Of a stretch of DNA of 64,000 nucleotides, positions 11,621-61,649 are shown one piece after another. Origin of the DNA: Macrostomum lignano (lineage: Eukaryota); contig NIVC01002827.1 of assembly GCA_002269645.1 (NCBI GenBank), forward strand, positions 73,686-137,685, read 5' to 3'. The translations under genes and the position numbers were made by a program. The notes under the pieces are model-generated. The model had not been told where the DNA came from. It did no database searches and worked only from the letters and a program-made list of their open reading frames with translations. The first letter of the stretch is position 1; each line of letters starts with the position of its first letter.

Positions 11621-11694
<74 letters not shown>

Positions 11695-11705
11695 CCAATC
11701 AATCG

Positions 11706-11766
<61 letters not shown>

Positions 11767-12960: not shown

Positions 12961-13032
12961 GATGAAGGTACACATTGATACAGGGATGAAGGATATCGAT
13001 GCAGGGATGAAGGGACACATTGACCATTGCAG

Positions 13033-13243
13033 GCGCACTCGTCCGTGGAGAAGGCCGCGGTGATCAGTCTGGTTCAGATTCGATTTGTCCCATCCGACGA
13101 GCGGCACTCGATGCGCGGCGCTGCACTGGAGCGCATGATCGCCGAGGACGTTAAACGGGGCTTGCAGCCGTTTTACGTTTGCGCCACGCTGGGCACCACC
13201 GGAGCCTGCGCGTTTGACGTGCTTGAAGAGATCGGGCCAGTGT
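13033..13243 (+). CDS. HDC: Histidine decarboxylase, coding exon 4
   Basis: Acceptor TTGCAG|[21 protein letters not shown]...[28 protein letters not shown]. Phase-1 donor T|GTGAGT. Confidence 0.92.
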
Positions 13244-13274
13244 GTGAGTTTCCGCGGGGACCTGTCAACATCTT

Positions 13275-13460
13275 GAACACACTTGAACACACTTCTCAAA
13301 CACCTTTCTCAAAGACATTTCTCATAGACACTTCTCAGAGACACTTCTCAGAGACATTTCTCAGAGACATTTCTCAAATACACTTCTCAGAGACACTTCT
13401 CAAAGTCACTTCTCAAAGACACTCCTCAAAGATACTTGTTAAAGTCACTTCTCAGGACTC
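13275..13460. repeat. Degenerate about 13-bp repeat (ACACTTCTCAGAG)n, HDC intron 4
   Basis: Seen directly. It explains the non-HDC middle of ORF 13027-13848. Confidence 0.8.
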
Positions 13461-13560
13461 TTTCCTGGCACTAATCTCTTACGATTTATACCTGACACCT
13501 GCTCTAACGCATTCCCAAAACGTTCCTTCACCAAACGCTATCTGGATCAAACCGTCGCAG

Positions 13561-13723
13561 GTAAAACGCACGACCTTTGGCTTCACGTGGACGCGGCTTA
13601 CGCCGGAAGCAGCTTCGTCTGTCCAGAGTTTCGCCAGCCAATGCGCGGAATTCAACACGCTGAGTCATTTGTCTTCAATCCCAGCAAGTGGCTGCTGGTC
13701 AACTTCGACTGTACAGCGCTTTG
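13561..13723 (+). CDS. HDC: Histidine decarboxylase, coding exon 5 (PLP-lysine)
   Basis: Acceptor TCGCAG|GT. (C)[24 protein letters not shown]...[19 protein letters not shown] contains the NPSKW PLP-binding lysine motif. Donor TG|GTAAGC. Not in the ORF track. Confidence 0.93.
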
Positions 13724-13888
13724 GTAAGCGGAGGTTAAAGACTACGTCGTATCAAACTCAGTGTTTGTGTACAAAACTTAACCAGGGGATTCATGCCAAG
13801 TGTGTGACTGACAAACTTACGGCTCGTATTAGCAATACAGATCTCTGATCTCAGACTACAGTTAAGTTCGCCATTCCTCATCCGGCAG

Positions 13889-26100: not shown

Positions 26101-27360
26101 TGTCTAACAGGTGACTCTAGTGTCTAACAGGTGACTCTAGTGTCTAACAGGTGACTCTAGTGTCTAACAGGTGACTCTAGTGTCTAACAGGTGACTCTAG
26201 TGTCTAACAGGTGACTCTAGTGTCTAACAGGTGACTCTAGTGTCTAACAGGTGACTCTAGTGTCTAACAGGTGACTCTAGTGTCTAACAGGTGACTCTAG
26301 TGTCTAACAGGTGACTCTAGTGTCTAACAGGTGACTCTAGTGTCTAACAGGTGACTCTAGTGTCTAACAGGTGACTCTAGTGTCTAACAGGTGACTCTAG
26401 TGTCTAGCAGGTGACTCTAGTGTCTAACAGGTGACTCTAGTGTCTAACAGGTGACTCTAGTGTCTAACAGGTGACTCTAGTGTCTAACAGGTGACTCTAG
26501 TGTCTAACAGGTGACTCTAGTGTCTAACAGGTGACTCTAGTGTCTAACAGGTGACTCTAGTGTCTAACAGGTGACTCTAGTGTCTAACAGGTGACTCTAG
26601 TGTCTAACAGGTGACTCTAGTGTCTAACAGGTGACTCTAGTGTCTAACAGGTGACTCTAGTGTCTAACAGGTGACTCTAGTGTCTAACAGGTGACTCTAG
26701 TGGCTAACAGGTGACTCTAGTGTCTAACAGGTGACTCTAGTGTCTAACAGGTGACTCTAGTGTCTAACAGGTGACTCTAGTGTCTAACAGGTGACTCTAG
26801 TGTCTAACAGGTGACTCTAGTGTCTAACAGGTGACTCTAGTGTCTAACAGGTGACTCTAGTGTCTAACAGGTGACTCTAGTGTCTAACAGGTGACTCTAG
26901 TGTCTAACAGGTGACTCTAGTGTCTAACAGGTGACTCTAGTGTCTAACAGGTGACTCTAGTGTCTAACAGGTGACTCTAGTGTCTAACAGGTGACTCTAG
27001 TGTCTAACAGGTGACTCTAGTGTCTAACAGGTGACTCTAGTGTCTAACAGGTGACTCTAGTGTCTAACAGGTGACTCTAGTGTCTAACAGGTGACTCTAG
27101 TGTCTAACAGGTGACTCTAGTGTCTAACAGGTGACTCTAGTGTCTAACAGGTGACTCTAGTGTCTAACAGGTGACTCTAGTGTCTAACAGGTGACTCTAG
27201 TGTCTAACAGGTGACTCTAGTGTCTAACAGGTGACTCTAGTGTCTAACAGGTGACTCTAGTGTCTAACAGGTGACTCTAGTGTCTAACAGGTGACTCTAG
27301 TGTCTAACAGGTGACTCTAGTGTCTAACAGGTGACTTTAGTGTCTAACAGGTGACTCTTC
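14181..27360. repeat. 20-bp satellite (CTAACAGGTGACTCTAGTGT)n, about 655 copies, filling HDC intron 7
   Basis: Direct tandem array. Degenerate copies continue to about 27490, close to the acceptor. Confidence 0.99.
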
Positions 27361-27529
27361 TCTCCAACCAAATGACTCTAGTATCGAACCAGATGACTCA
27401 GTTTCTAAAATGTGAATTGAATATCTATACAGTTAACACTAGTGTATAACAGTTGATTCAAATATCTAACAGGTCACAAGTGTCTAATGTTTAATTGCCT
27501 GCCACCCGAACTTTCAACCACCACTGCAG

Positions 27530-27631: not shown

Positions 27632-27879
27632 GTTCGACTATTAATGATACCTGAATTTCAAAGAAGTCTTGGATAGAGTTTAGCTGGTATTAAGGCTAAA
27701 AGTGCATGTATCGTTGTACTTTATCACATCACTCTCGTCTAAATGAAGCTTCCTATTTGTGTTCGGGATCAGTTTAAACGATTGATTTCACTATTGAAAC
27801 GATAAAGTGATATTAGCAGCTGGATTTTGCACGAAGCGCAGTCTGAGGCTGTTATTTATAAAAGTCAATCTGTTATCGT

Positions 27880-28245
27880 TTAAAGTCCTTCTGATCGTTC
27901 AAGGTCACTCTCTCATCGTTCAAAGTCACTCTCTTATCCTTCGAGGTCAGTCTCTTATCTTTCAAGGTCACTCTCTTATGCTCGTATCGCTCAAGGCCTG
28001 TCTCTTATCGTTCAAGGTCAGTCTCTTACGCTCTTATCGTTCAAGGTCAGTCTCTTACGCTCTTATCGTTCAAGGTCAGTCTCTTACGCTCTTATCGTTC
28101 AAGGTCAGTCTCTTACGCTCTTATCGTTCAAGGTCAGTCTCTTACGCTCTTATCGTTCAAGGTCAGTCTCTTACGCTCTTATCGTTCAAGGTCAGTCTCT
28201 TACGCTCTTATCGTTCAAGGTCACTCTCTTATGATCTTATCATTA
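27880..28245. repeat. 29-bp tandem repeat (TCTTATCGTTCAAGGTCAGTCTCTTACGC)n, HDC intron 8
   Basis: About 8 near-perfect copies plus degenerate flanks. Confidence 0.95.
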
Positions 28246-28377
28246 AAGGTCACGTTTTTATCAAATTCAAGGTCAGTGTCGTATTAAACGTATCGATCAA
28301 TCGCATTAAAACACAATAATGCCCGAAGCCTCTACTTCTAGTAGCAATGTTAGATAAAAATACAACGATCCTCCTAG

Positions 28378-28794
28378 GGCGACAATGTGAACACAGAGAC
28401 GCTACTGAAGCGGGTGAACAAATCCGGCCAGATCCACATGGTCCCAGCCGCTTTGAAAGGCCGCTACATCATCCGTTACACGGTCACCTCGCCCATGACC
28501 ACCGAAGCTGACTTGGACTTCGACTACTCCGTCATTAGCGACATCGCTGGTCGAGTTTTGGCCGACGTCGGGCGTGAGCAGCAGCTCCAGCAGCAGAAAC
28601 AGAAACAGCTGCTACAACTGCAGCAACAGCAGCAACTGCAGTTGCCGCAGCAACCGATGCCACAGCAGCCGAGACGGCCACCAAAGAGAATCGGCGACTA
28701 TCGAATGTCTCTGTTGCTAAGCAACGTGACATCCCAGCCGAAGTTTGTCGACAGCTCGTTCGCCGCTCTTACTGACAGTCGAGAGTTGGCCAGG
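28378..28794 (+). CDS. HDC: Histidine decarboxylase, coding exon 9
   Basis: Acceptor CCTAG|GGC. GDNVNTETLLKRVNKSGQIHMVPAALKGRYIIRYTVTS ends the catalytic domain, followed by a polyQ stretch and SLLLSNVTSQPKFVDSSFAAL, which resembles the insect HDC tail motif SLLLSNSPMSPKVVNGSFAAI. Donor AGG|GTTGGT. Confidence 0.87.
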
Positions 28795-28804
28795 GTTGGT
28801 GGCT

Positions 28805-29060
28805 TGTCCATCCCTAATCCCATACCTCTGATCCCATAACCCTAATCCCATATCTCCAATCCAATATCCCTGATCCCCATATACCATATCTCTAATCCCA
28901 CATCTCAAATCTCTAATCCCATATCCCTGACCACATATCCCATATCCCTAATCCCATACCTCAAATCTCTAATTCGATATCCCATATACCTAATCCCGTA
29001 TCTCCAATCCCATATCCCTAATCCCATATCTCCAATCCAATATCCCTAGTCCCATACCTC
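28805..29060. repeat. Degenerate ATCCCTAATCCCAT-type repeat, HDC intron 9
   Basis: C/A/T-rich short tandem units seen directly. Confidence 0.8.
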
Positions 29061-29670: not shown

Positions 29671-30679
29671 AGGCCGATTATCGAAATTTTGCAGGTTCGG
29701 GTTGGTTCTAATTTATTTAACAACTTTGAGAACATTTTCTAGCGTCGATTTCTGGTTTTACTTCTGCAGAAATCATATTTTTTGAATGGGATTGAATAAT
29801 TTACTTCAAAGGTTTTATTGGTACTTTTATCAAGTGTTGGAAATTGATTTTAGACCAATAGCTGTATTTAAGTCCACTGTCTGCGACCTATAAATTTAGC
29901 AATATGCAGTAGTATTTTTCAGTAGTATTTTAGTTTTTCTGCGCTTAAATGTTGCTACATGTATTTCAAATTAACTGATCCTTTGCTGTTGTATGTTAAT
30001 GTATTACCTTAGCAAGCTGTGTGCACGCTGTACGCGTATTTATAATCGTAAATAATGTTTCCTATAATAGCTACGGCGGACTGTATTTGCACGCCTATAG
30101 ATTCTTAGATTTTTAGAACCTAGCCAAGAACGTTATAATTATCTATTAATTGTTTTTATTTCCTCTTTATTTGTTTTTGTGTACACTAAGAAAGCACATT
30201 GGAGTATAATCTTAGATTGTCTTTATCCGTCGGCATTGAAACACATCAGACAGAAAAAATTAGAGCACTAACCATTTTTTGTTTTATTTTGTTTAATCGC
30301 TTAAATACTACGTTAAAAGATATTAATCCGTCAGTTCGTCTGCATATCGTAGATAAATATTGTACTTTAGAAATGATTGCACACGGCTATTGAAATTATT
30401 TGTTGCTGTTATTCAAAATTTATTCATTTATTAGTAAAACTAAAATGTTTAAATTAATATTACATTGACGGACAATATATCAATACGAGTAAACTTTTTG
30501 TTAGTTTGTTAGTCTGAGCACTTTTAATAGTGCCCAATAAATATTGACTATGGTATTTATTGCCAGATCGACTACTAACAATAGTGCTTCAGTTTCACGG
30601 CCCGCTGAGAAAGTCTATGGTAAAGGTACAAAAATTAGATGTCTATAAAAGACTCGGAAAGTCTATTGGAAAGTTTATA

Positions 30680-31019
30680 TTGGTTTTGTCAGCCTAACTG
30701 AGAATAAAGCCATCCAAAGTGAGAATCCCGCCTACACTGACCGCGAAGGGCCCGGCTGCGTGCAGCCTTAGTCCATGGGCCATAGACAATAAAGGACAAG
30801 CAAAGTGATAAAAAGCCATCCAATGTGAGAATCGATTGGTCTATGCGTCGTATTCTTTTATTTTTATACCTTCTGAGCCATATGACTAGCCAATCCTAGC
30901 CTATCCTTTATAGTCTATGGCCCATAGACTAGGCTGGACACAGCTAGGCCCTTCGTATTCAGCGTAGGCAGGATTCTCACTTTGGATGGCTTTATTCTCA
31001 GTTAGGCTGACAAAACCAA
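30680..31019. mobile_element. MITE with long TIRs and TA target duplication
   Basis: TA-TTGGTTTTGTCAGCCTAACTGAGAATAAAGCCATCCAAAGTGAGAATCC...GGATTCTCACTTTGGATGGCTTTATTCTCAGTTAGGCTGACAAAACCAA-TA. The TIRs are perfect for about 48 bp and imperfect to about 110 bp. Confidence 0.88.
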
Positions 31020-32840
31020 TACCAGTAACATGTGGTGGTGTATTGCATTTGCAAATTTTATTGGCGGCAGTGATAATGGATGTCTTTCTGCGATAGCTTT
31101 ACACTTCTATTAGCTATTTAATAATTGTACAGTAAGTTAGTGCAGGCCTCATGAAGCTACCGAATCGACTAACTTTCAAATTTCAAAGTTACATTCGCGC
31201 CTCGATCTGAGCATCATTCGGACGTTTGTCAAACCGCGACGTACTCGACGTCAACATAAGTCGCTAGAAAATTGGTGTTTTTACGTTACGCCGACGGATG
31301 GCAAGGCTATACCGGTACGTCGGCCGAATGTGGGAGTAATGTAACTTATTTAATAGCGACGTCGAAGCGTTGGCCAATGTCGCCGAAGTCGGATTTTGCT
31401 GTATGGGCCCCGTAAGCATACTGAAACTCAGCATCAGAATTGTGCATCCAGGTCAGAAAAACCCGTCGCGTCACTGGCTAGATCGGACACAATCCATATA
31501 AATATTTGCTAACTACAGCACAAATTTACATGCAGCATAAATAATATCAGATCGGGATCGAGCAGCTTAACGAAAAACGCATGTGACTCTCGCGTCACAA
31601 TTCAGCTAGGAGCATGCAATTTGCCAGTGGGTTGTCGGTTGTCGTGCGACAACCCACAATTAGAACAAATTGTGGCACAATATCCGTAAAAAATCGTGTA
31701 GTGATTACCGCTGTAAAAATCGATCGCGAAATTTTAGCGTACCCGTCGATGGAAGTCTTTAACAAAGCAGGTAATTTTTATTACGCCGACGGATAGCGAC
31801 GTTTAAAGTAGGATAGCTCGTACTAGTAATTTTCGTTGTATTATATACATATGGTTTACTCGTAGTAAATATAAGTATATATGTAGCATATATTTCGATA
31901 GATTCGAAAAACGAGTTGGCAAGCATATTGCGAATCAAGCCCTCTTAAACGACTAACTGAGTGGGGGGAATTTAGAAACAGAAAAGTACTGTACAAATTA
32001 AGAAGCATTCAAAAAATGTAGAAGGAAAATACGGATTTACCCACTAAAATAGAACGTAATAAACCATATTAGTAGCTGGAAATTACACATACAACAATGC
32101 ATATATCATAACAGCGTACCATTTCATACCATTAGCAACCCTTTCCGAGTGACGCCGATAGACGTCGCAATTATCAGATGCCAGTAGTTAACACAACTTG
32201 TTAACACATGCCAGTAGATTATCGTAAGATATTGAGAAATAGCATTAATATTTTACGTGAAAATAACATGGATAAATACAGAATGTGATAGACACACAGC
32301 TATAATTGATTGGACAACTATAGACACTATTAGCACGATTCAAAGACGAATTAATTGGATCTTTAAGTGAATTAATTTAACAGATTTTCCAATTAAATGT
32401 ATGATCATATGCACTGAAATTGCAGTGCTTTCTGAACAGTTTAGATCAGCACAACGCAAATGTAAATAAAATTTAATTCAATATTAAAAAATTGAATGAC
32501 ACGAAGTTCATGTTTTGTTTTTAGTTCACGTTAAGGTCGTTATGAGGACTTACATTATAAAGTTCTTTTATACCACCTTCTTGCACTTATGACCTATGAG
32601 CCACTAAATTACACGATTGACGAAAAACGAGCACAAGCCATGTGACAAGGACCACTCTAAAAGTTACCGTTGTCTACGTTGTTGTGTTTTTATGGTAACT
32701 TCTAGTGGTCCTTGCCATGTGATCGCTATTAAAATTAGCTTCGCTGAATGAAGGTGTGATCGAGTCCTAGAAGGTTTTCTATACTTCAACTATGCCCTTG
32801 CAATACTTGCTTCTGGTGAGGTTAGAGTACAACAGATATA

Positions 32841-35402
32841 TTAAAGCGTCTCTAGTATTACGCCAGGAACTCTACCAGGCTTACTGACATATACAACGAC
32901 ATCGTAGATATTTTCAACTTCACTTCTATCATTGGAACTACCGTTTAGAATGATGTCAGTAGCTGGTTGCTGAGCCGTTCGTCTCGAACGCCGGCGGAGC
33001 CAGAATCCAAGCGCTATCAAAGCGCCACAACCGAGCACTACAGCAGACAGCAGCAGAGCCAGTCGACGATAGAAACTTGCCGGATCGACGCTTTCAGCGA
33101 TCAAATCAGAGTTCACCATCATCTTCTTAAGGCTCTCTGACCTATCTGAGTTAATCAGCTGGTCTTCGAATGCAGTAGAGTAGAAACAAGTCGGATCTTC
33201 AGCACAGATTGTGTCGCTACCGTTGTACTCCACTTTCCGAGAGTATCTTACCAGTTCTATATGGCCGAGGACTTCAATGTCAGGGTAGTGATAGTTAAAC
33301 ACCGCGGTGAGCGAACCCGATTTCTTTGACGCTTGTTCTTTAAAAAGGTTCAGTAAATTTGGCGTGCTCTTCATGGCGGCAACGTTTACGCTAAAAATGA
33401 GTTGACCATTTTTATTGTCATACTCGATGCTCAATGCGTCTTGCCAATCGCATTCGATTAGGAATGCTCGTGTGAGCGCGAGTCCGTTTAGACTGAAATG
33501 TCCAGTAAAGCGAGCTCCAGAAGATGTTACAGACTCAAGGAACCGTCGCTCGATAGAAAACTTCCAGTCAATGCAACTGTAAATCAGGCACAGATGTTTC
33601 CATGAGCAGTGACTCGCACTGCTAGCTGTGACATGGGCTGCTGGGAGAATTTCGGGAACTAAAACGATGTGGGAGCGAGCACGCATCCAGTACATCGGCA
33701 GTTCGGGCTCACCGTCTTGTATAGATTGCACTGTACATACAAAAGTATTTGCGTCTTCAAATGAAGCTGAAGTATTTATTCCGTAGAAACGATTCAAATT
33801 ATTTTCAGTCGGAGGTAAGTATGCAGTCTGTTTGGTAAGAATCGACGAAAACAGCGAGTTTCTTTGAGTTTTAGTTTTATAATTGACACTTATTCGCGTG
33901 TCTGCTTGTTCCGACACTTCAGTCTCGCAAGTCAGGTTTATGCTGTCACCCTCAGCTACCAAAACTCGATCTGGAGGGTACCTCAGTCCCTGTGGTGGAA
34001 CAACTACATGAACTTGTATATGTGCAGACACTCCTCCTGCTCTGCACATGTAGTCACCACCGTGACTTTTCTGCGACAGTTTCTTTGGCAGTTCGATCAC
34101 GTGACCTCCAGTCGCGATCTTTATTCCATTGGCAAGCGTTGTCCATTGCTTAGTAGGGTAACCTGTTGACAATTGAGCAATCAAAGACTGATTGTTGTGG
34201 TAAAACTCGGATTGACGACTCCCGATCGCCGAGTTGCACACAATCGGACAAGCTAAATGAGAGCGCACCATTCCTGATCGAAGAGTTACACTTCTTCTTT
34301 TCTTACCAACAAGACTGCATTTTGCACCGCGAACTACAAGTGGTGTTCCAGACTGTCTTGTGCTCGGAAGAGACAAGCGTCCAACTCTTCGGCGAACCTC
34401 GTAAGGTTCCCGTTCGCCAGAAAGTGACAGAATGACGCAAAATGTGACGTCTCCTGTGCTGCGTTGTTTCATTACATCCATGATGCCAATTGAGAACAAT
34501 TTCAATCTACCTGTAGCCACGTCCAGTTGTGCATGCCGCATCAGATCCAAGTTCCACTGGTCTAGCTTCGTGTAGAAATTATTTGTTAGAATAACTGATC
34601 GGCTGAACTGCAGATTCTGACAATGGTCTGGACTGAGCGCAAGGCCTACATTGATCAACGGCTGCAAGAATGGAGGAGCTGACTTGATCAGGTTGACTAA
34701 ATTATCACTTATGATTTGGACACTTTGCGCTCTGTCCACCTCTGACTCGATCATGCCTCGCGAAAACAAAGCATTCAGTATTTCCGATGCATTGTGAACC
34801 AAAGTAGGAATTTTCAACCAAGCATCCATGGTCCAAACGTAGAGTCGACCGCTTTCCATCAGAATCGTGCCATCGAAGCCTTTCCATACCACCTGCAGAA
34901 TCAGCGCATCGCTAAACTTCCCGGCGAGAGCTGATCTTTCGAAACGCCAGTTGGATTTTTCAACAAGTCTAATCAGTAATTCTGTGCGGTCTATTGAGAA
35001 CAGCTCGAAAGGACTGCCGGCTGTCAAGCAAAGCTTCTCATTCCTTGTCGTTACCAGCCGATCTTTAAAGTTCCCCTGTAGTAAAGCAGTTTCAGAAGCA
35101 CCTTGTTTACATTTATATCGCAGATAAATACTGTTGTACGCTTCGATATGCTTCGCTAATGAAGGAAAGTCAACTTTGATTTTGAGCACGTGACTGGGTG
35201 ACTCAGCAGATAAAACGGCCAGCTGTGCTGTTCTCTGTTGACTAGCAAACCATGTGTCGCCCCACATCAGCAAATTCTGGTTGTTGGATGCTACCAGAGC
35301 GAAATCCATTTGTAAAAGCAGCGCTGTAGCAACAATCTGAATGAGTTGTAAATGAATTAATTTGTCAATAGAAATGAAAAGCAATGCAAAATTGTTTAGC
35401 AA
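32841..35402 (-). CDS. Type-I membrane protein with two Ig-like domains (paralog A)
   Basis: 853-codon ORF. Ig motifs LAC...HGGDYMC and AEGDSINLTC...EDANTFVC, TM segment LALLLSAVVLGCGALIALGFWL followed by RRRSR, short tail with NIYDVV. The true 5' end is probably a splice acceptor (CATTCAG|ATT at 35336) rather than the TTG start. Confidence 0.8.
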   Translation of the reverse strand: MLNNFALLFISIDKLIHLQLIQIVATALLLQMDFALVASNNQNLLMWGDTWFASQQRTAQLAVLSAESPSHVLKIKVDFPSLAKHIEAYNSIYLRYKCKQGASETALLQGNFKDRLVTTRNEKLCLTAGSPFELFSIDRTELLIRLVEKSNWRFERSALAGKFSDALILQVVWKGFDGTILMESGRLYVWTMDAWLKIPTLVHNASEILNALFSRGMIESEVDRAQSVQIISDNLVNLIKSAPPFLQPLINVGLALSPDHCQNLQFSRSVILTNNFYTKLDQWNLDLMRHAQLDVATGRLKLFSIGIMDVMKQRSTGDVTFCVILSLSGEREPYEVRRRVGRLSLPSTRQSGTPLVVRGAKCSLVGKKRRSVTLRSGMVRSHLACPIVCNSAIGSRQSEFYHNNQSLIAQLSTGYPTKQWTTLANGIKIATGGHVIELPKKLSQKSHGGDYMCRAGGVSAHIQVHVVVPPQGLRYPPDRVLVAEGDSINLTCETEVSEQADTRISVNYKTKTQRNSLFSSILTKQTAYLPPTENNLNRFYGINTSASFEDANTFVCTVQSIQDGEPELPMYWMRARSHIVLVPEILPAAHVTASSASHCSWKHLCLIYSCIDWKFSIERRFLESVTSSGARFTGHFSLNGLALTRAFLIECDWQDALSIEYDNKNGQLIFSVNVAAMKSTPNLLNLFKEQASKKSGSLTAVFNYHYPDIEVLGHIELVRYSRKVEYNGSDTICAEDPTCFYSTAFEDQLINSDRSESLKKMMVNSDLIAESVDPASFYRRLALLLSAVVLGCGALIALGFWLRRRSRRTAQQPATDIILNGSSNDRSEVENIYDVVVYVSKPGRVPGVILETL

Positions 35403-38400
35403 ATTTATTGCGAACGTTGGCTCAGTATCTAATATAGCTGAGCTGTTGGTGTAAAATTGAGGAGATACTTAGTCATCTGCCTATTTGTCAACCGACGGAT
35501 TCTGGTCATTAGTGTATATGCAAGTAGACTTTAGATTTTCTACAAGGTAATATACTATTAAAGTACTATACTATTGAAGGAAAAATTTCAAAAAAATATA
35601 TAGAATTTTTATTTACCAAAATATTCAGCGGCATGGCGTTGTCGAGAAGAATTTTCTTCCAGAAGAACCACTACAAAAACCTGTCGTCTGTATTGTGCTT
35701 TGTGTGACAGATTGATTTTTAAAACAGTTGCTCCTTAGAACGCTACACTGGACATTGCAGTTATATTCCAGGTTATTGGCAGATTAAATAGTGACCCATG
35801 CTAAAATGTCCTTTAATTTTAAGGATTGATATGATATACAATTATAGTAGCTAAGTTCAGCATTCTAGAATGAACTAAAGTTATAATGGCAAAGTCATCA
35901 GTCGCAGTGATGTTCACTTGGCGGAATTCTAACTTTTGCAGAAGCTTTGCCTTCTGTCACAGCTATATTTATTATATTTCTTATTTTACGCTTGGTACCG
36001 CAACGTGCTTCTAAAATTTCCAGATTATACGCCCTCGTAATGACAAGAGAGAAGTTGATTTTTAGAAAACACTATCTCTTGATTACGTTGCTATAACTGT
36101 TCTAAATCTGCTGTAAATTTTTGCAAAGTTAAGACTGAAATGCATAGAACTATCTTTATAGGCCCAACTAATTTTGATGAATTGCATGGTTTTGAAAATT
36201 GAAACGTTACCTTGTGCTAGAAAATTGGGACTCCTTTGACTTTTGGAAACAGCAGCCAGAGAACAGGCATAATACTATCAATTTGCGCATAAAATTCTCA
36301 TTTTGCATGCTGTTATAGGTTACAGTCTGCTTATAAAAACATCACGGACAACTTAATAAGTTACTAAATTTTCCTCTAGTTGCATCAATCTTTTACAGTT
36401 TCGACAATCGTATAATTGTGGCTACGAGTATTAGGGAAGCTAATCTACGAGACGTACTAAGAGTTGTGCATTTTTCCAACAATGACAACAAAAGCCAGTC
36501 AACGAAGGAAATGCCAAGTTGCCAGAGAAGGTCTTCAAGAGTGCACTTTATTATCAGTGCGATATATCCCTGATTGTCTAATGCGCTCCTAGATCGAGCT
36601 CAAGAAGGATGAGCGCAGAATTCTAGGTTATGGTGAACTTTTTTTACTATATCTTTCACGTAAAACAAAACTAGGCTGTACGATATGAATGCAAAGCTAA
36701 AAGCTATATATTACAGTATATTATACATTCGTTCATTCGATCCGAGCCGTCCTCCAGTCCGAAGTGCTGCCCGACCGCCAGAGGGCTCGGCTGTGGCAGG
36801 CGGTGGTCGAAACCGTCCTGCTTTACAACGCCGAGTGGACGCTGACGGCTGCGCTAGAGCGGCAGCTGGACTCGGCGCACTCAGGGCTGCTCCGTGCGGC
36901 CTTTCGAGCTAACGAGAGCGTCGGAACCGAGGCCCTGTACGATCGGGCCAAGCTGCAGCGCCCGTCCACCATCCTGCGCCAAAGGCGACTTAAACTGGCG
37001 GGCCACGTGATCCGGGCCGAGGGCTACTGCCCCCAACCTGTTCAGGACGTCCTGCTGCTCACTTTGCAGGGTCCGTTCATGCGGGGTCAGGCCCGAACCC
37101 GTCGATACGTCGACTGCCTGCTGTGGACTTTGTTCGCTCCCAGGCTCTGCGGCGCGCCATCTGACGCGCCCTGCTCTAACTGTGACTGTGCATGCGGGGT
37201 CGCGTATTTTGTTGTTGTTGTTGTATATTATACATTACAATATATAAAACATGTTTTTTTAAAGCCAGAAATGTACAATGAAATGCAAGTAAAGAAAAGC
37301 GAATCAGGATAAAACCAATAGTAACCGGCATGAAACATCTGTTGATGCTAGTCGTATAGTGTATTTCTTAAGAAAACTGTACAATTGCGGACAAGATTTT
37401 TTTCAAGAAAAATATGTAAGTGGAACAGCAAGACTTCGTTGGAAAATACATTTAGGAGCGTATTACCTCTACAGAAATCTTCACATTGACTTTCTAATTT
37501 GTGTGATTAAATCGTTGCTCCGCGAGCCGTGCGTTATGGCTAGCAGCAATTTTCACAAAACAGGAAGTTTATGCAACGTCAAAATGGTAGATGAAGCCTA
37601 TTCCAACACGAGGCAATGCCCATCTAAGCTCGTTAAAACGTAGGCATAAATAATCCTGTTGTTGCGTAGGTCAACTGAATATTTAAATTAAAAATTAACA
37701 AAGTAGCCATAGGCGCATCGAAAAAAAGTTTGAGTGATGACGAATCGTAGACTTTCTGGGAGAAGTCTGGTATCGTTTAAGTGTCTGCTGCTTCGAGGAC
37801 TAGTGGTAATTACTTTAATTTATGAATTTATTTCAATGCCATACTTAGTAAGTTAGATGACAATATGCAAAGCGGGAAACATTTTAAGACTTCCACATGC
37901 ACGAGACTGGGCCTTCTGGTATGATGCTTCACGAGAGGATTCACTTTTAGATACTTATTAAAACAAATATTTCCAAGCGTTTATTAAAAACTGAAAAAAG
38001 ACAGTTTGTTCCAATTCAGCTAAACTTTTTCTATTCTAAACGCGCAGGTTGCAGCCACAGTCTTCTATCTGCCACATACATCGGCGCAACGAAATGGTGA
38101 CAATCGGTATTTGCTGCTATGGGGCGACACCTGGTTTGCCAGTGCACCCAAATTAGCACAGCTGGCCATTTTATCCGCCGAATCGTCCGGTCATATTCTG
38201 AATATCAAAACTGACCTTCGCTTCGGGATGACTTCAGAGAACGCAACTAAATATTGTTTCTTAAAATACAAATGTAACATCAGTGATTCTGATACAGACT
38301 TTTCAGAAGTAAGTCTTCACAGAAATTTAAATGAACAAAAGAAAAAGCTATGCTTCCGAGGCGCTATCGCCTTTGAGATTGAATCGACAAGTGGTTTCGA

Positions 38401-40403
38401 TAATTTCGGTTTTCAACTTATTAAATCTTTGGAACAAGGAAGTAAAAACTATAAATTTACTCCCACATTCCGAGATGCACTGACATTGCAGGTGGTATGG
38501 AAAGGCTTCGATGGCAAGATTCTGATGGAAAGCGGTCGACTCTACGTTTGGACCATGGATGCTTGGTTGAAAATTCCTACTTTGGTTCACAATGCATCGG
38601 AAATACTGAATGCTTTGTTTTCGCGAGGCATGATCGAGTCAGAGGTGGACACAGCGCAAAGTGTCCAAATCATAAGTGATAATTTAGTCAACCTGATCAA
38701 GTCAGCTCCTCCATTCTTGCAGCCGTTGATCAATGTAGGCCTTGCGCTCAGTCCAGACCATTGTCAGAATCTGCAGTTCAGCCGATCAGTTATTCTAACA
38801 AATAATTTCTACACGAAGCTAGACCAGTGGAACTTGGATCTGATGCGGCATGCACAACTGGACGTGGCTACAGGTAGATTGAAATTGTTCTCAATTGGCT
38901 TCATGGATGTAATGAAACAACGCAGCACAGGAGACGTCACATTTTGCGTCATTCTGTCACTTTCTGGCGAACGGGAACCTTACGAGGTTCGCCGAAGAGT
39001 TGGACGCTTGTCTCTTCCGAGCACAAGACAGTCTGGAACACCACTTGTAGTTCGCGGTGCAAAATGCAGTCTTGTTGGTAAGAAAAGAAGAAGTGTAACT
39101 CTTCGATCAGGAATGGTTCGCTCTCATTTAGCTTGTCCGATTGTGTGCAACTCGGCGATCGGGAGTCGTCAATTCGAGTTTTACCACAAAAATCAGTCTC
39201 TGATTGCTGAATTGTCAACAGGTTACCCTACTAAGCAATGGACAACGCTTAACAATGGAATAAAGATCGCGACTGGAGGTCACGTGATCGAACTGCCGAA
39301 GAAACTGTCGCAGAAAAGTCACGGTGGTGACTACATGTGCAGAGCAGGAGGAGTGTCTGCACATATACAAGTTCATGTAGTTGTTCCACCACAGGGACTG
39401 AGGTACCCTCCAGATCGAGTTTTGGTAGCTGAGGGTGACAGCATAAACCTGACTTGCGAGACTGAAGTGTCGGAACAAGCAGACACGCGAATAAGTGTCA
39501 ATTATAAAACTAAAACTCAAAGAAACCCACAGTTTTCGTCGATTCTTACTAAAAAGACTGTATACTTACCTCCGACTGAAAATAATTTGAATCGTTTCTA
39601 CGGAATAAATACTTCAGCTTCCTTTGAAGACGCAAATACTTTTGTATGTACAGTGCAATCTATACAAGACGGTGAGCCCGAACTGCCGATGTACTGGATG
39701 CGTGCTCGCTCCCACATCGTTTTAGTTCCCGAAATTCTCCCAGCAGCCCATATCACTGCTAGCAGTGCGAGTCACTGCTCATGGAAACATCTGTGCCTGA
39801 TTTACAGTCGCATTGACTGGAAGTTTTCTTTCGAGCGACGGTTCCTTGTGTCTGTAACATCTTCTGGAGCTCGCTTTACTGGACATTTCAGTCTAAACGG
39901 ACTCGCGCTCACACGAGCATTCCTGATCGAACGCGGTTGGCAAGACGCATTGAGCATCGAGTATGACAATAAAAATGGTCAACTCATTCTTAGCGTAAAC
40001 GTTGCCGCCACGAAGAGTACGCCAAATTTATTGAACCTTTTTAAAGAACAAGCGTCAAAGAAATCGGGTTCACTCACCGCGGTGTTTAACTATCACTACC
40101 CTGACATTGAAGTCCTCGACCATATAGAACTGGTAAGATACTCTCGGAAAGTGGAGTACAACGGTAGCGACACAATCTGTGCTGAAGATCCGACTTGTTT
40201 CTACTCTACTGCATTCGAAGACCAGCTGATTAACTCAGATAGGTCAGAGAGCCTTAAGAAGATGATGGTGAACTTTGATTTGATCGCTGAAAGCGTCGAT
40301 CCGGCAAGTTTCTATCGTCGACTGGCTCTGCTGCTGTCTGCTTTAGTACTCGGTTGTGGCGCTTTGATAGCGCTTGGATTCTGGCTCCGCCGGCGTTCGA
40401 GAC
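32981..40403. repeat. Large inverted duplication, arms about 32981-34897 and 38487-40403
   Basis: Line-by-line comparison of the arms gave about 34 nucleotide differences in about 1.9 kb (roughly 98% identity). Identity ends abruptly at CGTTCGAGAC just after the TM segment and at TGCAGGTGGTATGG on the N-terminal side. Confidence 0.95.
36730..37222 (+). mobile_element. 5'-truncated RTE-like LINE
   Basis: Encodes the end of a non-LTR RT (AVVETVLLYNAEW...ILRQRRLKLAGHVIR), has a (GTT)n tail, and a 14-bp TSD GTATATTATACATT at 36716-36729 and 37223-37236. Confidence 0.85.
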
Positions 40404-40552
40404 ATCAAAGTGTCGTGTCTACAAGGCCGCAATGCCGCTGGGAAACTGAGCCCGGAAACAATTTCGAACGGCAAGACGCTTACGATGTCGTACTTTTTGT
40501 TGATAAGCCAGAGCCGACTGCTGTTATTAGAAATGATTTTTGTCGTAAATAG
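38048..40552 (+). CDS. Type-I membrane protein with two Ig-like domains (paralog B)
   Basis: The 813-codon ORF at 38111 extends upstream in frame to acceptor CGCGCAG|GTT (38048; VAATVFYLPHTSAQ). Same Ig-Ig-TM layout as paralog A, tail with DAYDVV. Confidence 0.8.
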   Translation, partial: VAATVFYLPHTSAQRNGDNRYLLLWGDTWFASAPKLAQLAILSAESSGHILNIKTDLRFGMTSENATKYCFLKYKCNISDSDTDFSEVSLHRNLNEQKKKLCFRGAIAFEIESTSGFDNFGFQLIKSLEQGSKNYKFTPTFRDALTLQVVWKGFDGKILMESGRLYVWTMDAWLKIPTLVHNASEILNALFSRGMIESEVDTAQSVQIISDNLVNLIKSAPPFLQPLINVGLALSPDHCQNLQFSRSVILTNNFYTKLDQWNLDLMRHAQLDVATGRLKLFSIGFMDVMKQRSTGDVTFCVILSLSGEREPYEVRRRVGRLSLPSTRQSGTPLVVRGAKCSLVGKKRRSVTLRSGMVRSHLACPIVCNSAIGSRQFEFYHKNQSLIAELSTGYPTKQWTTLNNGIKIATGGHVIELPKKLSQKSHGGDYMCRAGGVSAHIQVHVVVPPQGLRYPPDRVLVAEGDSINLTCETEVSEQADTRISVNYKTKTQRNPQFSSILTKKTVYLPPTENNLNRFYGINTSASFEDANTFVCTVQSIQDGEPELPMYWMRARSHIVLVPEILPAAHITASSASHCSWKHLCLIYSRIDWKFSFERRFLVSVTSSGARFTGHFSLNGLALTRAFLIERGWQDALSIEYDNKNGQLILSVNVAATKSTPNLLNLFKEQASKKSGSLTAVFNYHYPDIEVLDHIELVRYSRKVEYNGSDTICAEDPTCFYSTAFEDQLINSDRSESLKKMMVNFDLIAESVDPASFYRRLALLLSALVLGCGALIALGFWLRRRSRHQSVVSTRPQCRWETEPGNNFERQDAYDVVLFVDKPEPTAVIRNDFCRK

Positions 40553-41188
40553 AAAAGTGGAGGATTTCTACATTGCATATTTTTTATGAACTTTACTACT
40601 GTTTACAGAACAGAAGAAGCGCAACTCATATCCAGTAATAATTATTAGTAATAATGCTAATTTTTTTAAATTCTCTATTCATTTTTTTAGTTTTGCATGT
40701 TGCTTTAGTCCGCCTTATTCTGTCCGATTGTATGTCGAAAAACACGACTGGATTTATTAGTACTTGCATCAGGTACAAATGTAAATACCATGCTACGAGC
40801 TACATTTTCATTCAAGGGATTTGCTGATTTTAGCTCGAGTTTCAGTCCCAGTCATAGTGATTTATTTTATTGCTTTCTTTTTTCGTTTCGGTTTTGTTAA
40901 CAAAAACAATATACGCTATTATGCGCTATTCAAGCTATTCAAGTATTCAAGGTATGCGCTAAAATAAACTTACATGCACGAATTCATTACCCATTCCATG
41001 GACCACTCATTATTGTCAGTCTCTCCAGTTGGATTCTCAGAGCAAAATCGCAAACACACACTGTACCTGCTCTAAATGCTTTTCAGTTAATGATCAGTTT
41101 TAGTGATAAAAGTGGGCTAACAAGAATGAAAATAGCATCCTGCAGTTTCGATAGTTATTGAATCATAAAGTTGTATATGTGCATCACC

Positions 41189-41667
41189 CTGCTCTGCGCA
41201 GGGCCCTGCTTGAACTCAACCGTAGGGTCACCAGGGCGGTGAGTCGTGACCATGGCCCTTCGGGTCATGGCTGTTTTTTCAGGCATCGTCACCTCCAACT
41301 CCAGGGAAAAATCCGCAACGAGGAATGCCTTTTCTGTCTCTACGGTGTCGAGAATGCTGAGCACTTCATCTGTGAATACCCCGCCTTTACCCAGGACAGG
41401 CTCAACCACTTCTGCTCAAAACCGGACCTCTCTAAAGTTTTCAGGCCCGAGAACCTCTGCCAGCTCATCCGCTACCTAAGGGCCATCGGGCGAGCGACCA
41501 TCCACCTCCTGGACTCTCTGGAGGGGAACCGCGCTGCGGACAACGGCACCACCGAATTTCCTAACTACCATTAGCTTCCAGTGGTAGCCAGGGGTTAGCA
41601 AAATGGGCGGCAACGCCTCCTAGCTGCATCCGGATGCACGGAGCCCCCGTGCAGCTAAGTAAAGTAA
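41189..41667 (+). mobile_element. 5'-truncated non-LTR retrotransposon (I/R1-like C-terminal CCHC region)
   Basis: GHG...HL...[19 protein letters not shown] zinc-knuckle remnant, (AAGT)-like tail, 10-bp TSD GTGCATCACC at 41179-41188 and 41668-41677. Confidence 0.8.
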
Positions 41668-43949: not shown

Positions 43950-46900
43950 TCAGTCATTGCTGCTGTCCCGTCTGATGTCCGGAGCCTTTCGCCAGTCGCC
44001 CTCTTCGTAGCGTTTCGGCGTCTCTTTAGCTTGTCGGGGGTGCGGCCTGTTGGCGAGCGGGACGTCCTGGTCGGCGGTTGGCTCGTATGGGCCGGTTGGT
44101 TCGTCCGGCTGGCTGTCCTGTCCGCTGTCTCGTTCCTCGTGGCCGTCTGGCCAATCGTCGGCTACCTGGGAGGCTCGCTTGACGTGGGTGGCGTGCCTGG
44201 AGCACCTTTGGCCGGCCCGCTGGAGCTGCAGGGTGTTGCCGCAGACTTTTGCCACGGTCCACGGCGAGGCCTCGAAGAAGGGGTTGGTCTTTCTGCGGTT
44301 GGTGAGCCGGCGGAAGACGAGGTCACCCTCGGTGATTTCGTGGTCGGTGGCGCCCCTCTTGCTGTCTGCGAATGCCTTCATCCGCTCCTTTGCCCTGGAG
44401 TCGTGGCCGCGGACGGTCTGTCGCCTGGCGTCAACCGGTCGGGAGTAGTGCAGGCTGGGGGATCGTGTCGTTGAGCTGTCGGCCGAACAGCAGGTCGGCT
44501 GGGGCCATGCCGGTTGTTGCGTGCGGTGTTCGACGGTAGGCCGCCAGGTAGTCGTCCATTGCCGTCTGCCAGTCGCTGCTCTCCAGGATCGCCGCTCTGA
44601 TTGCCTTATTGAGGCCCCGGTTGCATCGCTCCACGAGTCCGTTGGCTTAAGGGTGCAGCGGTGTAGTCCGATGGTGGTGGATGCCCTGACTGCTCAAGAA
44701 GGCGTTGAACTCAGCAGACGAGAATGGCGGGCCGTTGTCGGTGGTCATCTTGACTGGTTGGCCAAACGTGCTGAACTACTGGCAGAGGGTTCGGATGACC
44801 GGGACTGCTGCTGTCGACCCCGCCATTGTCTGTATCAGTGGAAAACGTGAAAAAGTCGGTGCACACCAGCAGCATGTGGCCTCTGATCGGTTCCAAGAAC
44901 TCCAAGCCCAACTCTCGCCAGGGCCCCTGCGGCAACTCAGTAGGCTGGATTGGTGCTGCCTTCAGCTCAGCTATGTTCGTGCAGGCCTTGCAGCTGAGAC
45001 AGGAGTTTACAAAATTCTCGACGGAGGCCTGCATAGAAGGCCACCAGACCTTTGTCTGCAGGCGTGCCAAGGATTTTTGGACACCCAGGTGGCCTTGGTG
45101 CTCCAGATGCAGGCAGCGGTAGCGCAGAATGTCGGGAACGACGATTTGGTGCCCTTTGAGCAGGAGTCCGTCGTGCTGTGAGAGCTCGTACCGCAGGCTG
45201 TGTAGGCTGCGCGTGTCGTGGCTTTCGAGTTGCCACCGCTGGGACTGGGCCCGGATACGGCGGCTTGGATCGCCCTGGCGCCTCCGGAGGCCGCCTTGAT
45301 CGTGTCGGGGCTGATGCTGTTCGGTGCCGCTGCCTAAGCCGTCATTGCGCTGTAGGCCGTGTCGAGATCTTCGCCCTCGTTGTTCGGCGGTGTTGGACGT
45401 GGCTGGCGGCTCAGGACATCCGCCGGGTTGTCTGCCCCTGGTGGGTAGGTGACTTTGAAGTGGAGCTCCTGCAGCTGAAGTGCCATGCGCTCGATCTGCG
45501 GCGGGGGCCGAGAACCAGGGCTGAGCAGGCTGACTAGCGGCTTGTGGTCGGTGAAAACCTTGAACTTTGGGCAGCCGCTAAGGTAGTGGTGGGATTTGAG
45601 GCAGCCGAATTTGATGGCCAGCGCCTCCCTCTCTGTCTGCGAGTAGCGCTGCTCTGTGTCACTGGCGTAGGCTGGCGTAGGTGATTGGCTTGGTGACACC
45701 GCTCGGTTGCATCTAGGCGAGGATCGGCCCGAGGCCGGTCGGCTGGCCTGGTCTCGCAGTTTTTGTTGAAGAAGGCAAGCGTGGTGCTGTGTGCGATCGA
45801 CTGCATGATGGAATGGAAGGCAGAGGCTTGCTGTGGGCCCCAAGACCACTGCACGTTCTCCTTGGTCAGCTCTCGAAGGGGCCTCGCTTTGTCGGCGAGA
45901 TTTGGGATGAAGCGGACTACGAATGTGACGAGTCCGCGAGGAAGGACCGCACCTCCGTTGCATTTTCTGGTCGCTTGAAGTTGGCCACAGCCTCCAGCTT
46001 TTCCTCGGTCGGTTAGATTCCGGCCGCCGAGAGGCGCATGGCCAGGAAGTCGGCCTGCTGGGTCGCAATGCGGCATTTGCGGGGGTTCAGAGTCACGTTG
46101 TGTTGGCGCAGCCTGTCAAGGCAGTTGCGCAGCCGCTCGTTGTGCTCTCAGCTTAGGGTGCTGGCAAAGATGATTGACGTGACGCGAAAGCCAGGAGCTG
46201 ATTGTTGTTTAATAACGAATGTGAATGCTTGCGATATATTTGTAGGATAGCCAAAGTTACTTGACGAGCTAAAGACCGAGAGCAATAGCTTAAATATTGT
46301 AAATATTAAATTTCACTGATGCACTGGCTAAATGAGTGGGGAGAGTACAAAATGGTAGAGACTTAAGGGGCAGATCGCAAGCTGCAACCAAAGTGACCAA
46401 GCGAAGTTAAGCAGACAAACCCCGCAAAGTTACCATTACCAATCAACCGTCACTTCAATGATGATGTCGTCATGGACCCACCGCACGCCCCTCAAACCGC
46501 TCAGGATGGAAGTCATGACGCGCTGTAGGATTTTTGATGCTGAAGTAAATCCCATGCAAAGACGCTTGAGGCGAAGCAGGCCCAGAGGTGTTGAGAAGGT
46601 GAGGAGGTGACGTGACTTCTCGCTGACCTCGATCTGGTGGAAGGCCTTGGCAACGTCCTGTTCGGAAAAGTAGGTGGAGCCGGCCATCTCATCTGTGACT
46701 TCCTCAAATGTCGGTATTGGCTGCTTTTCTGGAACGACGTACTTATTGACGTCCCTCAGGTCCTGTGTGATGCGGATCTCACCTGGCGAGGCCTTCGGGC
46801 AGATCAACATACGTGAACTCCAGGCACTGGGCCCCGTCACTCGCTCCAGGATGCTGGCTGCTAGCTGGTCTTTCAGCTTTTTTCCACTGCGGTTCGAAGA

Positions 46901-61578: not shown

Positions 61579-61649
61579 GTATATTGTCTGATCTGGATTT
61601 TTGTGGAATGGAGTTTTGTGAGAGATAATCGCTCTTAGACTAATTCTAT

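What the first reader, a model, noticed from the sequence alone, without database searches (positions are those of the whole stretch)
32981..40403. Possible invertible switch that swaps N-terminal domains between the two tails
The 1.9-kb arms are about 98% identical, inverted, and 3.6 kb apart. The spacer holds both variable N-terminal domains and the shared upstream region. A single crossover anywhere in the arms would flip the spacer and fuse tip A to tail B and tip B to tail A, leaving both ORFs intact. That would give four receptor combinations from two genes, like a shufflon or phase-variation switch in an animal. The geometry is seen in the sequence; that flipping occurs is inference.
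Basis: inference. Interest (0 to 1): 0.72.

Follow-up and report, generated by a model that had tools for sequence, protein, structure and literature searches.

The report
Inverted flatworm receptor-gene pair, middle homogenised
Two neighbouring, oppositely oriented copies of a flatworm cell-surface receptor gene have had their middle 1.9 kb recently copied from one to the other by gene conversion; nothing shows they act as a DNA-flipping switch, so this is an ordinary kind of gene-family evolution.

Summary
Arms 32981-34910 and 38474-40403 are 1930 nt, inverted, 97.98% identical (39 mismatches, no indels) and 3563 nt apart. They are the only long inverted repeat in the window.

The arms lie inside two head-to-head intronless ORFs: A at 32841-35402 (-) and B at 38111-40552 (+). 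Both encode about 800-aa single-pass membrane proteins with Ig-like ectodomains. Their only relatives are a Macrostomum lignano family, at 22-34% identity. A histidine decarboxylase exon is 93% identical to M. lignano, so the host is a Macrostomum-like free-living flatworm.

A and B are homologous end to end. Synonymous divergence is 0.034 in the arms, about 1.6 in the N-terminal domain and saturated in the cytoplasmic tail, with sharp edges. This is the signature of old paralogs whose middle was recently homogenised by gene conversion.

Flipping the spacer in silico keeps both frames open and swaps N-terminal domain against tail. However, there is no recombinase, no short crossover sites and no evidence of a second orientation.

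Occasional inversion by homologous recombination is plausible and testable with long reads. A programmed switch is very unlikely. Interest is low to moderate.

The parts
32841..35402 (-). Gene A: long ORF of 853 codons as listed. The frame is open up to 35468. A candidate splice or trans-splice acceptor AG lies at 35338-35337, so the exon would start at 35336 in phase 0. The product is a type I membrane protein with an Ig-like ectodomain.
   Evidence: homology to the M. lignano family
38111..40552 (+). Gene B: long ORF of 813 codons as listed. The frame is open from 38024. A candidate acceptor AG lies at 38046-38047, so the exon would start at 38048 in phase 0. There is no in-frame ATG before codon 40. 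B is a paralog of A.
32981..34910 (-). Left arm, the homogenised block in gene A (codons 165-808). It covers ectodomain domains 2 onward, the transmembrane helix (about 33062-32994) and the RRRSR stop-transfer motif.
38474..40403 (+). Right arm, the homogenised block in gene B (codons 122-765), including the transmembrane helix (about 40322-40390) and RRRSR.
34911..38473 (.). Spacer of 3563 nt. This is the segment that a crossover between the arms would invert.
34911..35336 (-). Divergent N-terminal coding part of A: a signal-like stretch plus the first beta-sandwich domain.
   Evidence: dS about 1.6 against B
38048..38473 (+). Divergent N-terminal coding part of B.
32841..32980 (-). Cytoplasmic tail of A plus the stop codon. 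It lies outside the arm and shares only a short motif, YDVV..V.KP, with B.
40404..40552 (+). Cytoplasmic tail of B plus the stop codon, outside the arm.
36701..37309 (+). GC-rich open frame of 203 codons in the middle of the spacer. It looks like a transposable-element fragment (non-LTR reverse transcriptase C-terminal part, recalled from memory) but has no Pfam match. It occurs on one side only, so the two upstream halves are not symmetrical.

Best explanation
This is a head-to-head pair of old paralogs from a flatworm-specific family of Ig-like, single-pass cell-surface proteins. One or more intrachromosomal gene conversions recently homogenised the central 1.93 kb of the two genes, from the second ectodomain domain through the transmembrane helix.

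The membrane-distal N-terminal domain and the cytoplasmic tail escaped conversion. The likely reason is that divergence there blocks heteroduplex extension, or that converted variants are selected against.

Shown: the inverted geometry, the mosaic divergence, and that both long reading frames are open. Inferred: the conversion mechanism and the reason for its edges.

As a by-product, the arms are a substrate for homologous recombination that would invert the 3.6-kb spacer and re-pair N-terminal domains with tails. If this happens, it is an occasional germline event giving an inversion polymorphism, not a regulated switch.
For: (1) A and B are homologous over their whole length, not only in the arms. 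BLASTP aligns A residues 44-842 with B residues 1-800, and tblastn extends the match back to 38045.

(2) Divergence is mosaic within one ORF:
- Arms: dS 0.034, dN 0.016.
- N-terminal 115 codons: dS 1.64, dN 0.55.
- Tail: saturated.
Identity steps from about 50% to 98-100% at 34910/38474 and back at 32981/40403. The 5' edge is graded over about 13 nt and the 3' edge is abrupt.

(3) The flank divergence matches what old paralogs of this family show. M. lignano tandem partners are evenly about 46% and 30-32% identical along their length, with no homogenised block.

(4) Mismatches in the arms are mildly clustered (P about 0.01-0.04 by permutation), as patchy or repeated conversion would give.

(5) Both genes look alive. 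There are no indels or stops in 1930 nt, omega in the arms is about 0.5, and family-conserved cysteines and motifs are kept.

(6) Adjacent inverted paralogs homogenised by conversion are documented in animals, for example the C. elegans hsp16 inverted repeat and hsp70-7/8 (PMC3966223). In yeast the same process drives a flip/flop inversion (PMC9731477).
Against: Concerted evolution is inferred from one haplotype of one species. No ortholog was available to show that A and B arms cluster by species rather than by gene.

A single 1.9-kb tract is long for animal gene conversion as I recall it. The 39 differences cannot distinguish one older event from several.

The ends could instead have been imported from unseen paralogs elsewhere in the genome. 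That is still a recombination mosaic, but with the opposite polarity.

Neither gene has a verified start codon. B has no in-frame ATG near the start of its long ORF, so expression and intactness are inferred.
Confidence: 0.8

Rival explanations
1. Recurrent germline flip-flop. Non-allelic homologous recombination between the arms repeatedly inverts the spacer, so both orientations segregate in the population and N-terminal domains are reshuffled with tails. Conversion keeps the arms similar enough for this to continue. This is compatible with the best explanation and adds to it.
For: The arms are 1.93 kb with perfect runs up to 247 nt and only 3.6 kb apart. Every crossover product is in frame. 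The Saccharomyces chromosome XIV flip/flop region shows exactly this coupling of homogenisation and re-inversion (PMC9731477).
Against: There is no direct evidence, because only one orientation is in hand. In yeast the orientation was stable on laboratory timescales (section heading). The functional gain would be small, because the two bodies differ at only 23 residues.
Confidence: 0.3
2. Programmed or somatic invertible switch. Regulated flipping within an animal generates receptor diversity, analogous to shufflons or the phage Mu G segment.
For: Only the geometry: the variable parts lie inside, the constant arms are inverted, and both products are in frame.
Against: No recombinase-type ORF lies within about 8 kb of either arm. 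The nearest transposase-like ORF, at 48781-49947, is Harbinger-like and unrelated to the arms. There are no short specific crossover sites. The arms are ordinary coding sequence whose similarity is explained by conversion. Relatives in M. lignano are tandem or single, not inverted. From my own knowledge, no such system has been described in animals.
Confidence: 0.02
3. Recent inverted duplication of the whole gene, followed by very fast divergence of the two ends and no gene conversion.
For: The N-terminal domain is the most variable part of the family in M. lignano as well. Receptor tips often evolve fast.
Against: Synonymous sites are also about 50-fold more diverged in the ends than in the arms, which selection on the protein cannot produce. 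The ends also carry many indels, whereas the arms have none. The edges are step-like.
Confidence: 0.05
4. Assembly or polishing artefact that made two more divergent paralogs look 98% identical, or created a false inverted copy.
For: Long-read assemblies of Macrostomum were polished with short reads (PMC10468722). Multi-mapping reads can homogenise paralogs.
Against: A foldback artefact would give a perfect palindrome without homologous but diverged ends. Here each copy has its own old N-terminus, tail and flanks. The 39 differences are spread over the whole arm. Mis-polishing would not give step-like edges with open frames.
Confidence: 0.03

Closest known systems
Saccharomyces chromosome XIV 'flip/flop' region flanked by homogenised inverted paralogs YNL018C/YNL034W (Salzberg et al. 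2022, PMC9731477)
   Same: Fast-evolving paralogs form an inverted repeat of a few kb that is kept nearly identical by gene conversion. The repeat is a substrate for inversion of the intervening segment by homologous recombination.
   Different: In yeast the genes lie wholly inside the repeats and 15 unrelated genes are flipped, and both orientations have been observed. Here the repeat edges lie inside the ORFs, so a flip would create chimeric genes, and only one orientation is known.
Adjacent inverted paralogs under interlocus gene conversion in animals (C. elegans hsp16 inverted repeat, hsp70-7/8; review PMC3966223); arm-to-arm conversion in sex-chromosome palindromes (PMC8600007, listed)
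   Same: Inverted copies a few hundred bp to a few kb apart are far more similar than their age implies. The similarity is confined to a tract.
   Different: Here the tract covers only the middle of the coding sequence and leaves a recognition-type domain and the cytoplasmic tail diverged. Concerted evolution has not been shown phylogenetically.
Bacterial and phage invertible segments: shufflon (Rci), Mu G segment (Gin), Hin/Cin/Pin (from my own knowledge)
   Same: In the abstract it would work alike: inversion re-pairs a variable part of a surface or adhesion protein with a constant part.
   Different: Those systems use a dedicated site-specific recombinase and short crossover sites, and they switch at high frequency. 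None of these features is present here. See the membership test.
Macrostomum lignano 'Bravo_FIGEY / Ig-like domain-containing' proteins (e.g. PAA70766.1, PAA49069.1), divergent L1/neurofascin-like IgSF adhesion molecules
   Same: The proteins are colinear over about 770 residues and keep the conserved cysteines, the juxtamembrane CFYST.F motif and a single transmembrane helix. The model's best structural matches are contactin and neurofascin Ig arrays.
   Different: Identity is only 22-34%. A and B lack the Bravo_FIGEY cytoplasmic domain and have short unrelated tails. The M. lignano genes are tandem or single rather than head-to-head.

Membership tests
Site-specific invertible DNA switch (shufflon, Hin/Gin/Cin/Pin type) | Dedicated site-specific recombinase encoded next to the invertible segment | tested here: not met
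   Between 30 and 44 kb the only ORFs of at least 100 aa are the two receptor ORFs, short frames overlapping them, two fragments without Pfam matches, and one unscanned 143-aa frame at 43950-44381. The nearest transposase-like ORF is at 48781-49947 (HTH_Tnp_4 with weak DDE_Tnp_4).
Site-specific invertible DNA switch (shufflon, Hin/Gin/Cin/Pin type) | Short (tens of bp) specific crossover sites in inverted orientation bounding the segment | tested here: not met
   The repeats are 1930 nt of coding sequence. No other direct or inverted repeat of at least 16 nt occurs in the spacer, apart from the diverged N-terminal coding homology.
Site-specific invertible DNA switch (shufflon, Hin/Gin/Cin/Pin type) | Both orientations coexist in a population of molecules | not testable with these tools
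   Only a single assembled sequence is available. The look-ups I tried found no other copies of the locus.
Paralogs under interlocus gene conversion (concerted evolution) | A tract of much lower divergence, including at synonymous sites, embedded in homologous sequence of much higher divergence | tested here: met
   dS is 0.034 in the arms, 1.64 in the N-terminal part and saturated in the tail. Identity changes in steps.
Paralogs under interlocus gene conversion (concerted evolution) | Converted segments of the two paralogs cluster by species rather than by gene in a phylogeny | not testable with these tools
   No orthologous pair is available. The nearest relatives are M. lignano proteins at 22-34% identity.
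NAHR-mediated inversion polymorphism between inverted repeats (flip/flop, inversion toggling) | Inverted arms with long uninterrupted identity, close together on one chromosome | tested here: met
   Arms of 1930 nt at 98% identity, perfect runs of 247, 228 and 217 nt, and a 3563-nt spacer.
NAHR-mediated inversion polymorphism between inverted repeats (flip/flop, inversion toggling) | Both orientations observed among individuals or species | not testable with these tools
   No reads, haplotypes or sister-species loci were available.
L1/neurofascin-type IgSF adhesion molecules (Bravo_FIGEY tail) | Ectodomain made of Ig-like beta-sandwich domains | tested here: inconclusive
   The Pfam Ig_3 match is below the gathering score (E 3e-4 to 9e-4). 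The AlphaFold2 model has mean pLDDT 63 and is beta-rich. The top Foldseek PDB matches are contactin, neurofascin, sidekick and hemolin, but TM-scores are only 0.2-0.3.
L1/neurofascin-type IgSF adhesion molecules (Bravo_FIGEY tail) | Bravo_FIGEY (PF13882) cytoplasmic domain | tested here: not met
   A and B have no PF13882 match. It is present in the M. lignano relatives P0001 and P0003.
Macrostomum ~900-aa Ig-like membrane protein family | Full-length colinear homology with conserved cysteines and one C-terminal transmembrane helix | tested here: met
   phmmer E-values of 6e-39 to 3e-23 across residues 1-770, 21 invariant columns in the alignment, and the transmembrane helix.

The most novel reading that the evidence does not exclude
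The inverted pair is a working combinatorial device. Homologous recombination between the arms flips the spacer often enough, in the germline or even somatically, that individuals carry or express N-terminal domain A with tail B and the reverse. Gene conversion is maintained precisely to keep this recombination possible. That would be a recombinase-free, shufflon-like receptor shuffling system in an animal.
Probability: 0.03. Interest if true: 0.85.

Novelty: new member of a known kind. Interest (0 to 1): 0.3.

Why it matters
As it stands, this is a clean textbook-style example of partial gene conversion in an animal. A recognition-type N-terminal domain and a cytoplasmic tail stay old and different, while about 640 codons between them are kept nearly identical. 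The gene family appears, in the databases searched, to be confined to macrostomid flatworms and is uncharacterised.

It matters mainly in three ways:
- It is a caution for annotation and orthology, because the arms will mis-date the duplication and confound read mapping.
- It is a candidate inversion polymorphism whose breakpoints lie inside coding exons and give in-frame chimeras.
- If long reads showed both orientations, it would be an animal counterpart of the yeast flip/flop region in which the flip changes the proteins themselves.

Tried and rejected
- Word-indexed protein searches with B and with the family alignment found nothing. Only the exhaustive HMMER search found relatives.
- Exact-protein look-ups for three start variants of A and B found no other contig, so no second haplotype or orientation could be examined.
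- PDB sequence searches gave only marginal Ig hits.
- Pfam found nothing in the spacer ORF 36764-37312 or in 41158-41574. Calling them retrotransposon fragments therefore rests on memory only.
- The bacterial promoter/terminator scan of the spacer was below shuffle expectation and is irrelevant for a eukaryote.
- I looked for a cis exon 1 with an ATG and a donor upstream of A by eye and found no convincing candidate.
- I checked whether head-to-head pairing is a conserved family feature. It is not, because the M. lignano pairs are tandem.
- I considered V(D)J-like inversional joining and rejected it without a formal RSS scan. The repeats are long homologous coding sequence and no RAG-like or Transib-like ORF is nearby.
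- GC-biased conversion: the arms have somewhat higher GC (0.46) than the N-terminal parts (0.39-0.42). That is suggestive, but a single locus cannot decide it.
Full report

Yes, and it is exact. The repeat finder returns arms 32981-34910 and 38474-40403: 1930 nt, 98% complementary, 3563 nt apart. It is the only inverted repeat of at least 100 nt in the whole 64-kb window. Base by base there are 39 mismatches and no indels, which is 97.98% identity. A weaker inverted match, 35165-35284 against 38100-38219 at 76%, lies just inside the spacer on each side.

**2. What the arms are**

The arms are the central parts of two long, intronless, divergently transcribed ORFs:
- A is 32841-35402 on the minus strand, 853 codons.
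- B is 38111-40552 on the plus strand, 813 codons.

Both arms start at the first position of a codon in their gene. In A the arm covers codons 165-808, and in B it covers codons 122-765.

Each product has a large ectodomain, one hydrophobic helix (LALLLSA[L/V]VLGCGALIALGFWL) followed by RRRSR, and a tail of about 45 residues. The 5' edge falls after the first roughly 120 residues of the mature protein.

**3. What the proteins are, and whose**

Pfam sees only a sub-threshold Ig domain. PDB sequence searches are marginal. An exhaustive HMMER search of 1.8 billion representatives found full-length relatives only in the flatworm Macrostomum lignano. P0001-P0006 and P0012 matched with E-values from 6e-39 down to 3e-6, mostly colinear over residues 1-770. 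Identity is 25-34% over the matched stretches and 20-26% in the full alignment.

Their sources name them Bravo_FIGEY / neurofascin-L1-NrCAM C-terminal domain-containing or Ig-like domain-containing proteins. Pfam confirms PF13882 in their tails but not in A or B.

An AlphaFold2 model of B built on the family alignment has moderate confidence (mean pLDDT 63). It is a chain of mostly beta domains ending in the transmembrane helix at 731-761. Its best PDB matches are Ig-domain arrays of contactin, neurofascin, sidekick and hemolin, although TM-scores are low. I therefore read the family as very divergent IgSF adhesion or receptor molecules.

In the model the first beta-sandwich spans about residues 7-104 and is followed by a low-confidence linker at 108-117. 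The arm starts at residue 122. The unconverted N-terminal piece is therefore roughly one membrane-distal domain, within the uncertainty of the model.

A histidine decarboxylase exon at 13027-13848 is 93% and 89% identical to the two M. lignano HDC proteins, and 53-66% identical to the named HDCs of other animals. The window therefore comes from a Macrostomum-like free-living flatworm that is not M. lignano itself.

**4. The key result: mosaic divergence**

A and B are homologous along their whole length, not just in the arms. A sliding-window comparison shows about 50-70% DNA identity through the N-terminal coding part. Identity steps to 98-100% at 34910/38474 and drops back to about 50% at 32981/40403. 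The 5' edge is graded over about 13 nt, with 4 mismatches. The 3' edge is abrupt.

Nei-Gojobori estimates:

| Region | dS | dN | Protein identity |
|---|---|---|---|
| Arms | 0.034 | 0.016 | 96% |
| N-terminal 115 codons | 1.64 | 0.55 | 38% |
| Tail | saturated | 1.05 | about 20% |

A 50-fold difference at synonymous sites inside one ORF cannot come from selection on the protein. It means the ends are old and the middle is young.

In M. lignano, neighbouring family members are tandem, on the same strand and 3-4 kb apart, or single. The tandem partners are evenly about 46% or 30-32% identical along their length, with no homogenised block. The ends of A and B therefore look like ordinary old paralogs of this family, and the arms are the anomaly.

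The simplest history has three steps: an old duplication, an inverted arrangement, and then recent non-reciprocal copying of 1.93 kb from one copy to the other. The 39 differences are mildly clustered (P about 0.01-0.04), which fits more than one patchy event but is not decisive. Omega of about 0.5, the absence of indels and the retention of family-invariant residues argue that both copies are functional.

**5. Are both genes intact at the 5' end?**

This is not verified. M. lignano relatives encode the start codon and signal peptide in the same exon as the ectodomain. Here the long ORFs begin just downstream of where a signal peptide should be.
- A has an in-frame ATG at 35309, but no signal peptide follows it.
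- B has no in-frame ATG before codon 40.

Protein homology between A and B begins at an AG dinucleotide in each gene. In A this is ...cattcag|ATT, with the exon starting at 35336. In B it is ...gcgcag|GTT, with the exon starting at 38048. Both are in phase 0 with the ORF.

In M. lignano about 30% of genes receive a 35-nt spliced leader that ends in ...TTGCATG, at acceptors with the motif [T/C]TNCAG (PMC8629364). Related species also trans-splice (PMC10468722). A leader-donated AUG would give M-IVATALLLQMDFALVAS... for A and M-VAATVFYLPHTSAQ... for B, both short hydrophobic N-termini. This is inference, and an upstream cis exon in the spacer is the alternative. Either way, the starts and any promoters lie inside the spacer.

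**6.

The geometry is right. I inverted 34911-38473 in silico. Both frames stay open at 839 and 878 codons, with the N-terminus of B joined to the tail of A and the reverse. Perfect-identity runs of up to 247 nt look long enough for homologous recombination; that judgement is from my own knowledge.

What is missing is anything that makes this a switch:
- **No recombinase.** Between 30 and 44 kb the only open frames of at least 100 codons are the two receptor ORFs, short frames overlapping them, two fragments with no Pfam match (36701-37309 in the spacer and 41155-41571), and one unscanned frame at 43950-44381. The nearest transposase-like ORF, Harbinger-type at 48781-49947, is 8 kb away and unrelated to the arms.
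- **No short crossover sites** in the spacer.
- **No structured RNA** family was detected in the region.
- **No conserved inverted arrangement** in relatives.
- **A small effect.** The two bodies differ at 23 of 643 aligned residues. A flip would mainly re-pair one N-terminal domain with one roughly 45-residue tail and 3' UTR, and only two combinations exist on a chromosome at once.

**7. What it most likely does**

My best explanation, at confidence 0.8, is concerted evolution of an inverted paralog pair by gene conversion. The tract edges are set where divergence becomes too high for heteroduplex extension, or where conversion would erase useful differences in a recognition domain and a signalling tail.

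Occasional inversion by homologous recombination is a plausible by-product. I put the chance that both orientations segregate at about 0.3. This is what happens at the Saccharomyces chromosome XIV flip/flop region, where continual homogenisation of inverted paralogs keeps re-creating both orientations, although the orientation is stable on laboratory timescales (PMC9731477). Adjacent inverted paralogs homogenised by conversion are also known in animals, for example C. elegans hsp16 and hsp70-7/8 (PMC3966223).

I rate a programmed or somatic switch at about 0.02-0.03. An assembly or polishing artefact is unlikely (0.03), because each copy has its own old ends and flanks and the differences are spread over the whole arm.

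**8. Novelty and verdict**

This is a new member of a known kind: inverted paralogs with a gene-conversion tract, and a potential inversion substrate for non-allelic homologous recombination. Two features are mildly unusual. Both tract edges lie inside the coding sequence at what look like domain boundaries, and every crossover product would be an in-frame reciprocal chimera.

Interest is 0.3. It would rise sharply only if long reads showed both orientations, especially within single animals. The organism is a free-living flatworm and nothing here bears on harmful capabilities.

Noticed in passing
window 14189-27474: A 13.3-kb array of a 20-bp unit (TGACTCTAGTGTCTAACAGG), about 665 copies at 95% matches, with constant GC skew. 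It is a very large minisatellite lying between a histidine decarboxylase exon and the receptor pair.
   Followed up: no
window 72-11962 and 27861-29056: An unusually dense run of micro- and minisatellites: (AGAC)n 4158-4752, (ATAG)n 8547-9174, (ATCA)n 11233-11962, 27-bp x40 at 9794-10886, 59-bp x14 at 7280-8092, 63-bp x8 at 2594-3118, and 14-bp x30 at 72-495. Several 'ORFs' listed there (4087-4862, 5256-6119, 8519-9427) are just open frames through these repeats.
   Followed up: partly
window 13027-13848 (+): An exon of a pyridoxal-dependent decarboxylase (PF00282). It is 93% identical to M. lignano histidine decarboxylase over the matched part, which places the window in a Macrostomum-like flatworm.
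   Followed up: yes
window 12887-12956 (-): A borderline Rfam tRNA match (30 bits against a gathering score of 29, E 0.03). ARAGORN does not call it, so it may be a tRNA-derived repeat or a chance match.
   Followed up: partly
window 30678-30768 / 30931-31021: A 91-nt inverted repeat, 90% complementary, with a 162-nt loop, about 2 kb beyond the 3' end of gene A. It looks like a MITE or hairpin element.
   Followed up: no
window 36701-37309 (+) and 41155-41571 (+): Two open frames without Pfam matches. By eye they resemble C-terminal parts of non-LTR retrotransposon proteins (a C..C....H...C motif in the second). One sits in the middle of the spacer, the other about 600 bp beyond gene B. This identification is from memory and was not tested.
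   Followed up: partly
window 44000-48000: A GC-rich block (58-62% GC against about 42% around it) with many overlapping open frames and an RT_RNaseH fragment at 45334-46068 (-). It is probably a decayed LTR-type retroelement. I neither assembled nor reconstructed it.
   Followed up: no
window 48781-49947 (-): A 388-codon ATG ORF with HTH_Tnp_4 and weak DDE_Tnp_4 and C2H2 matches, so a Harbinger/PIF-like transposase or a domesticated relative.
   Followed up: no
window 57427-61638 (+): A 1403-codon open frame rich in Q, P, S and A, with about 47 copies of a 36-bp (12-residue, SQAYQQSAPPPA-like) repeat and no Pfam match. Its C-terminal end (...CTPLKFNLPHARLGLDAPGLVVQV) reminds me of the start of the Sec16 central domain, from memory only.
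   Followed up: no
L001 3102-12800; L002 10001-18900 (M. lignano NIVC01001207.1, NIVC01002404.1): In M. lignano, members of the same family occur as same-strand neighbouring pairs 3-4 kb apart and evenly about 46% or 30-32% identical. The P0001 gene has a single 85-nt intron, located in the cytoplasmic tail.
   Followed up: yes
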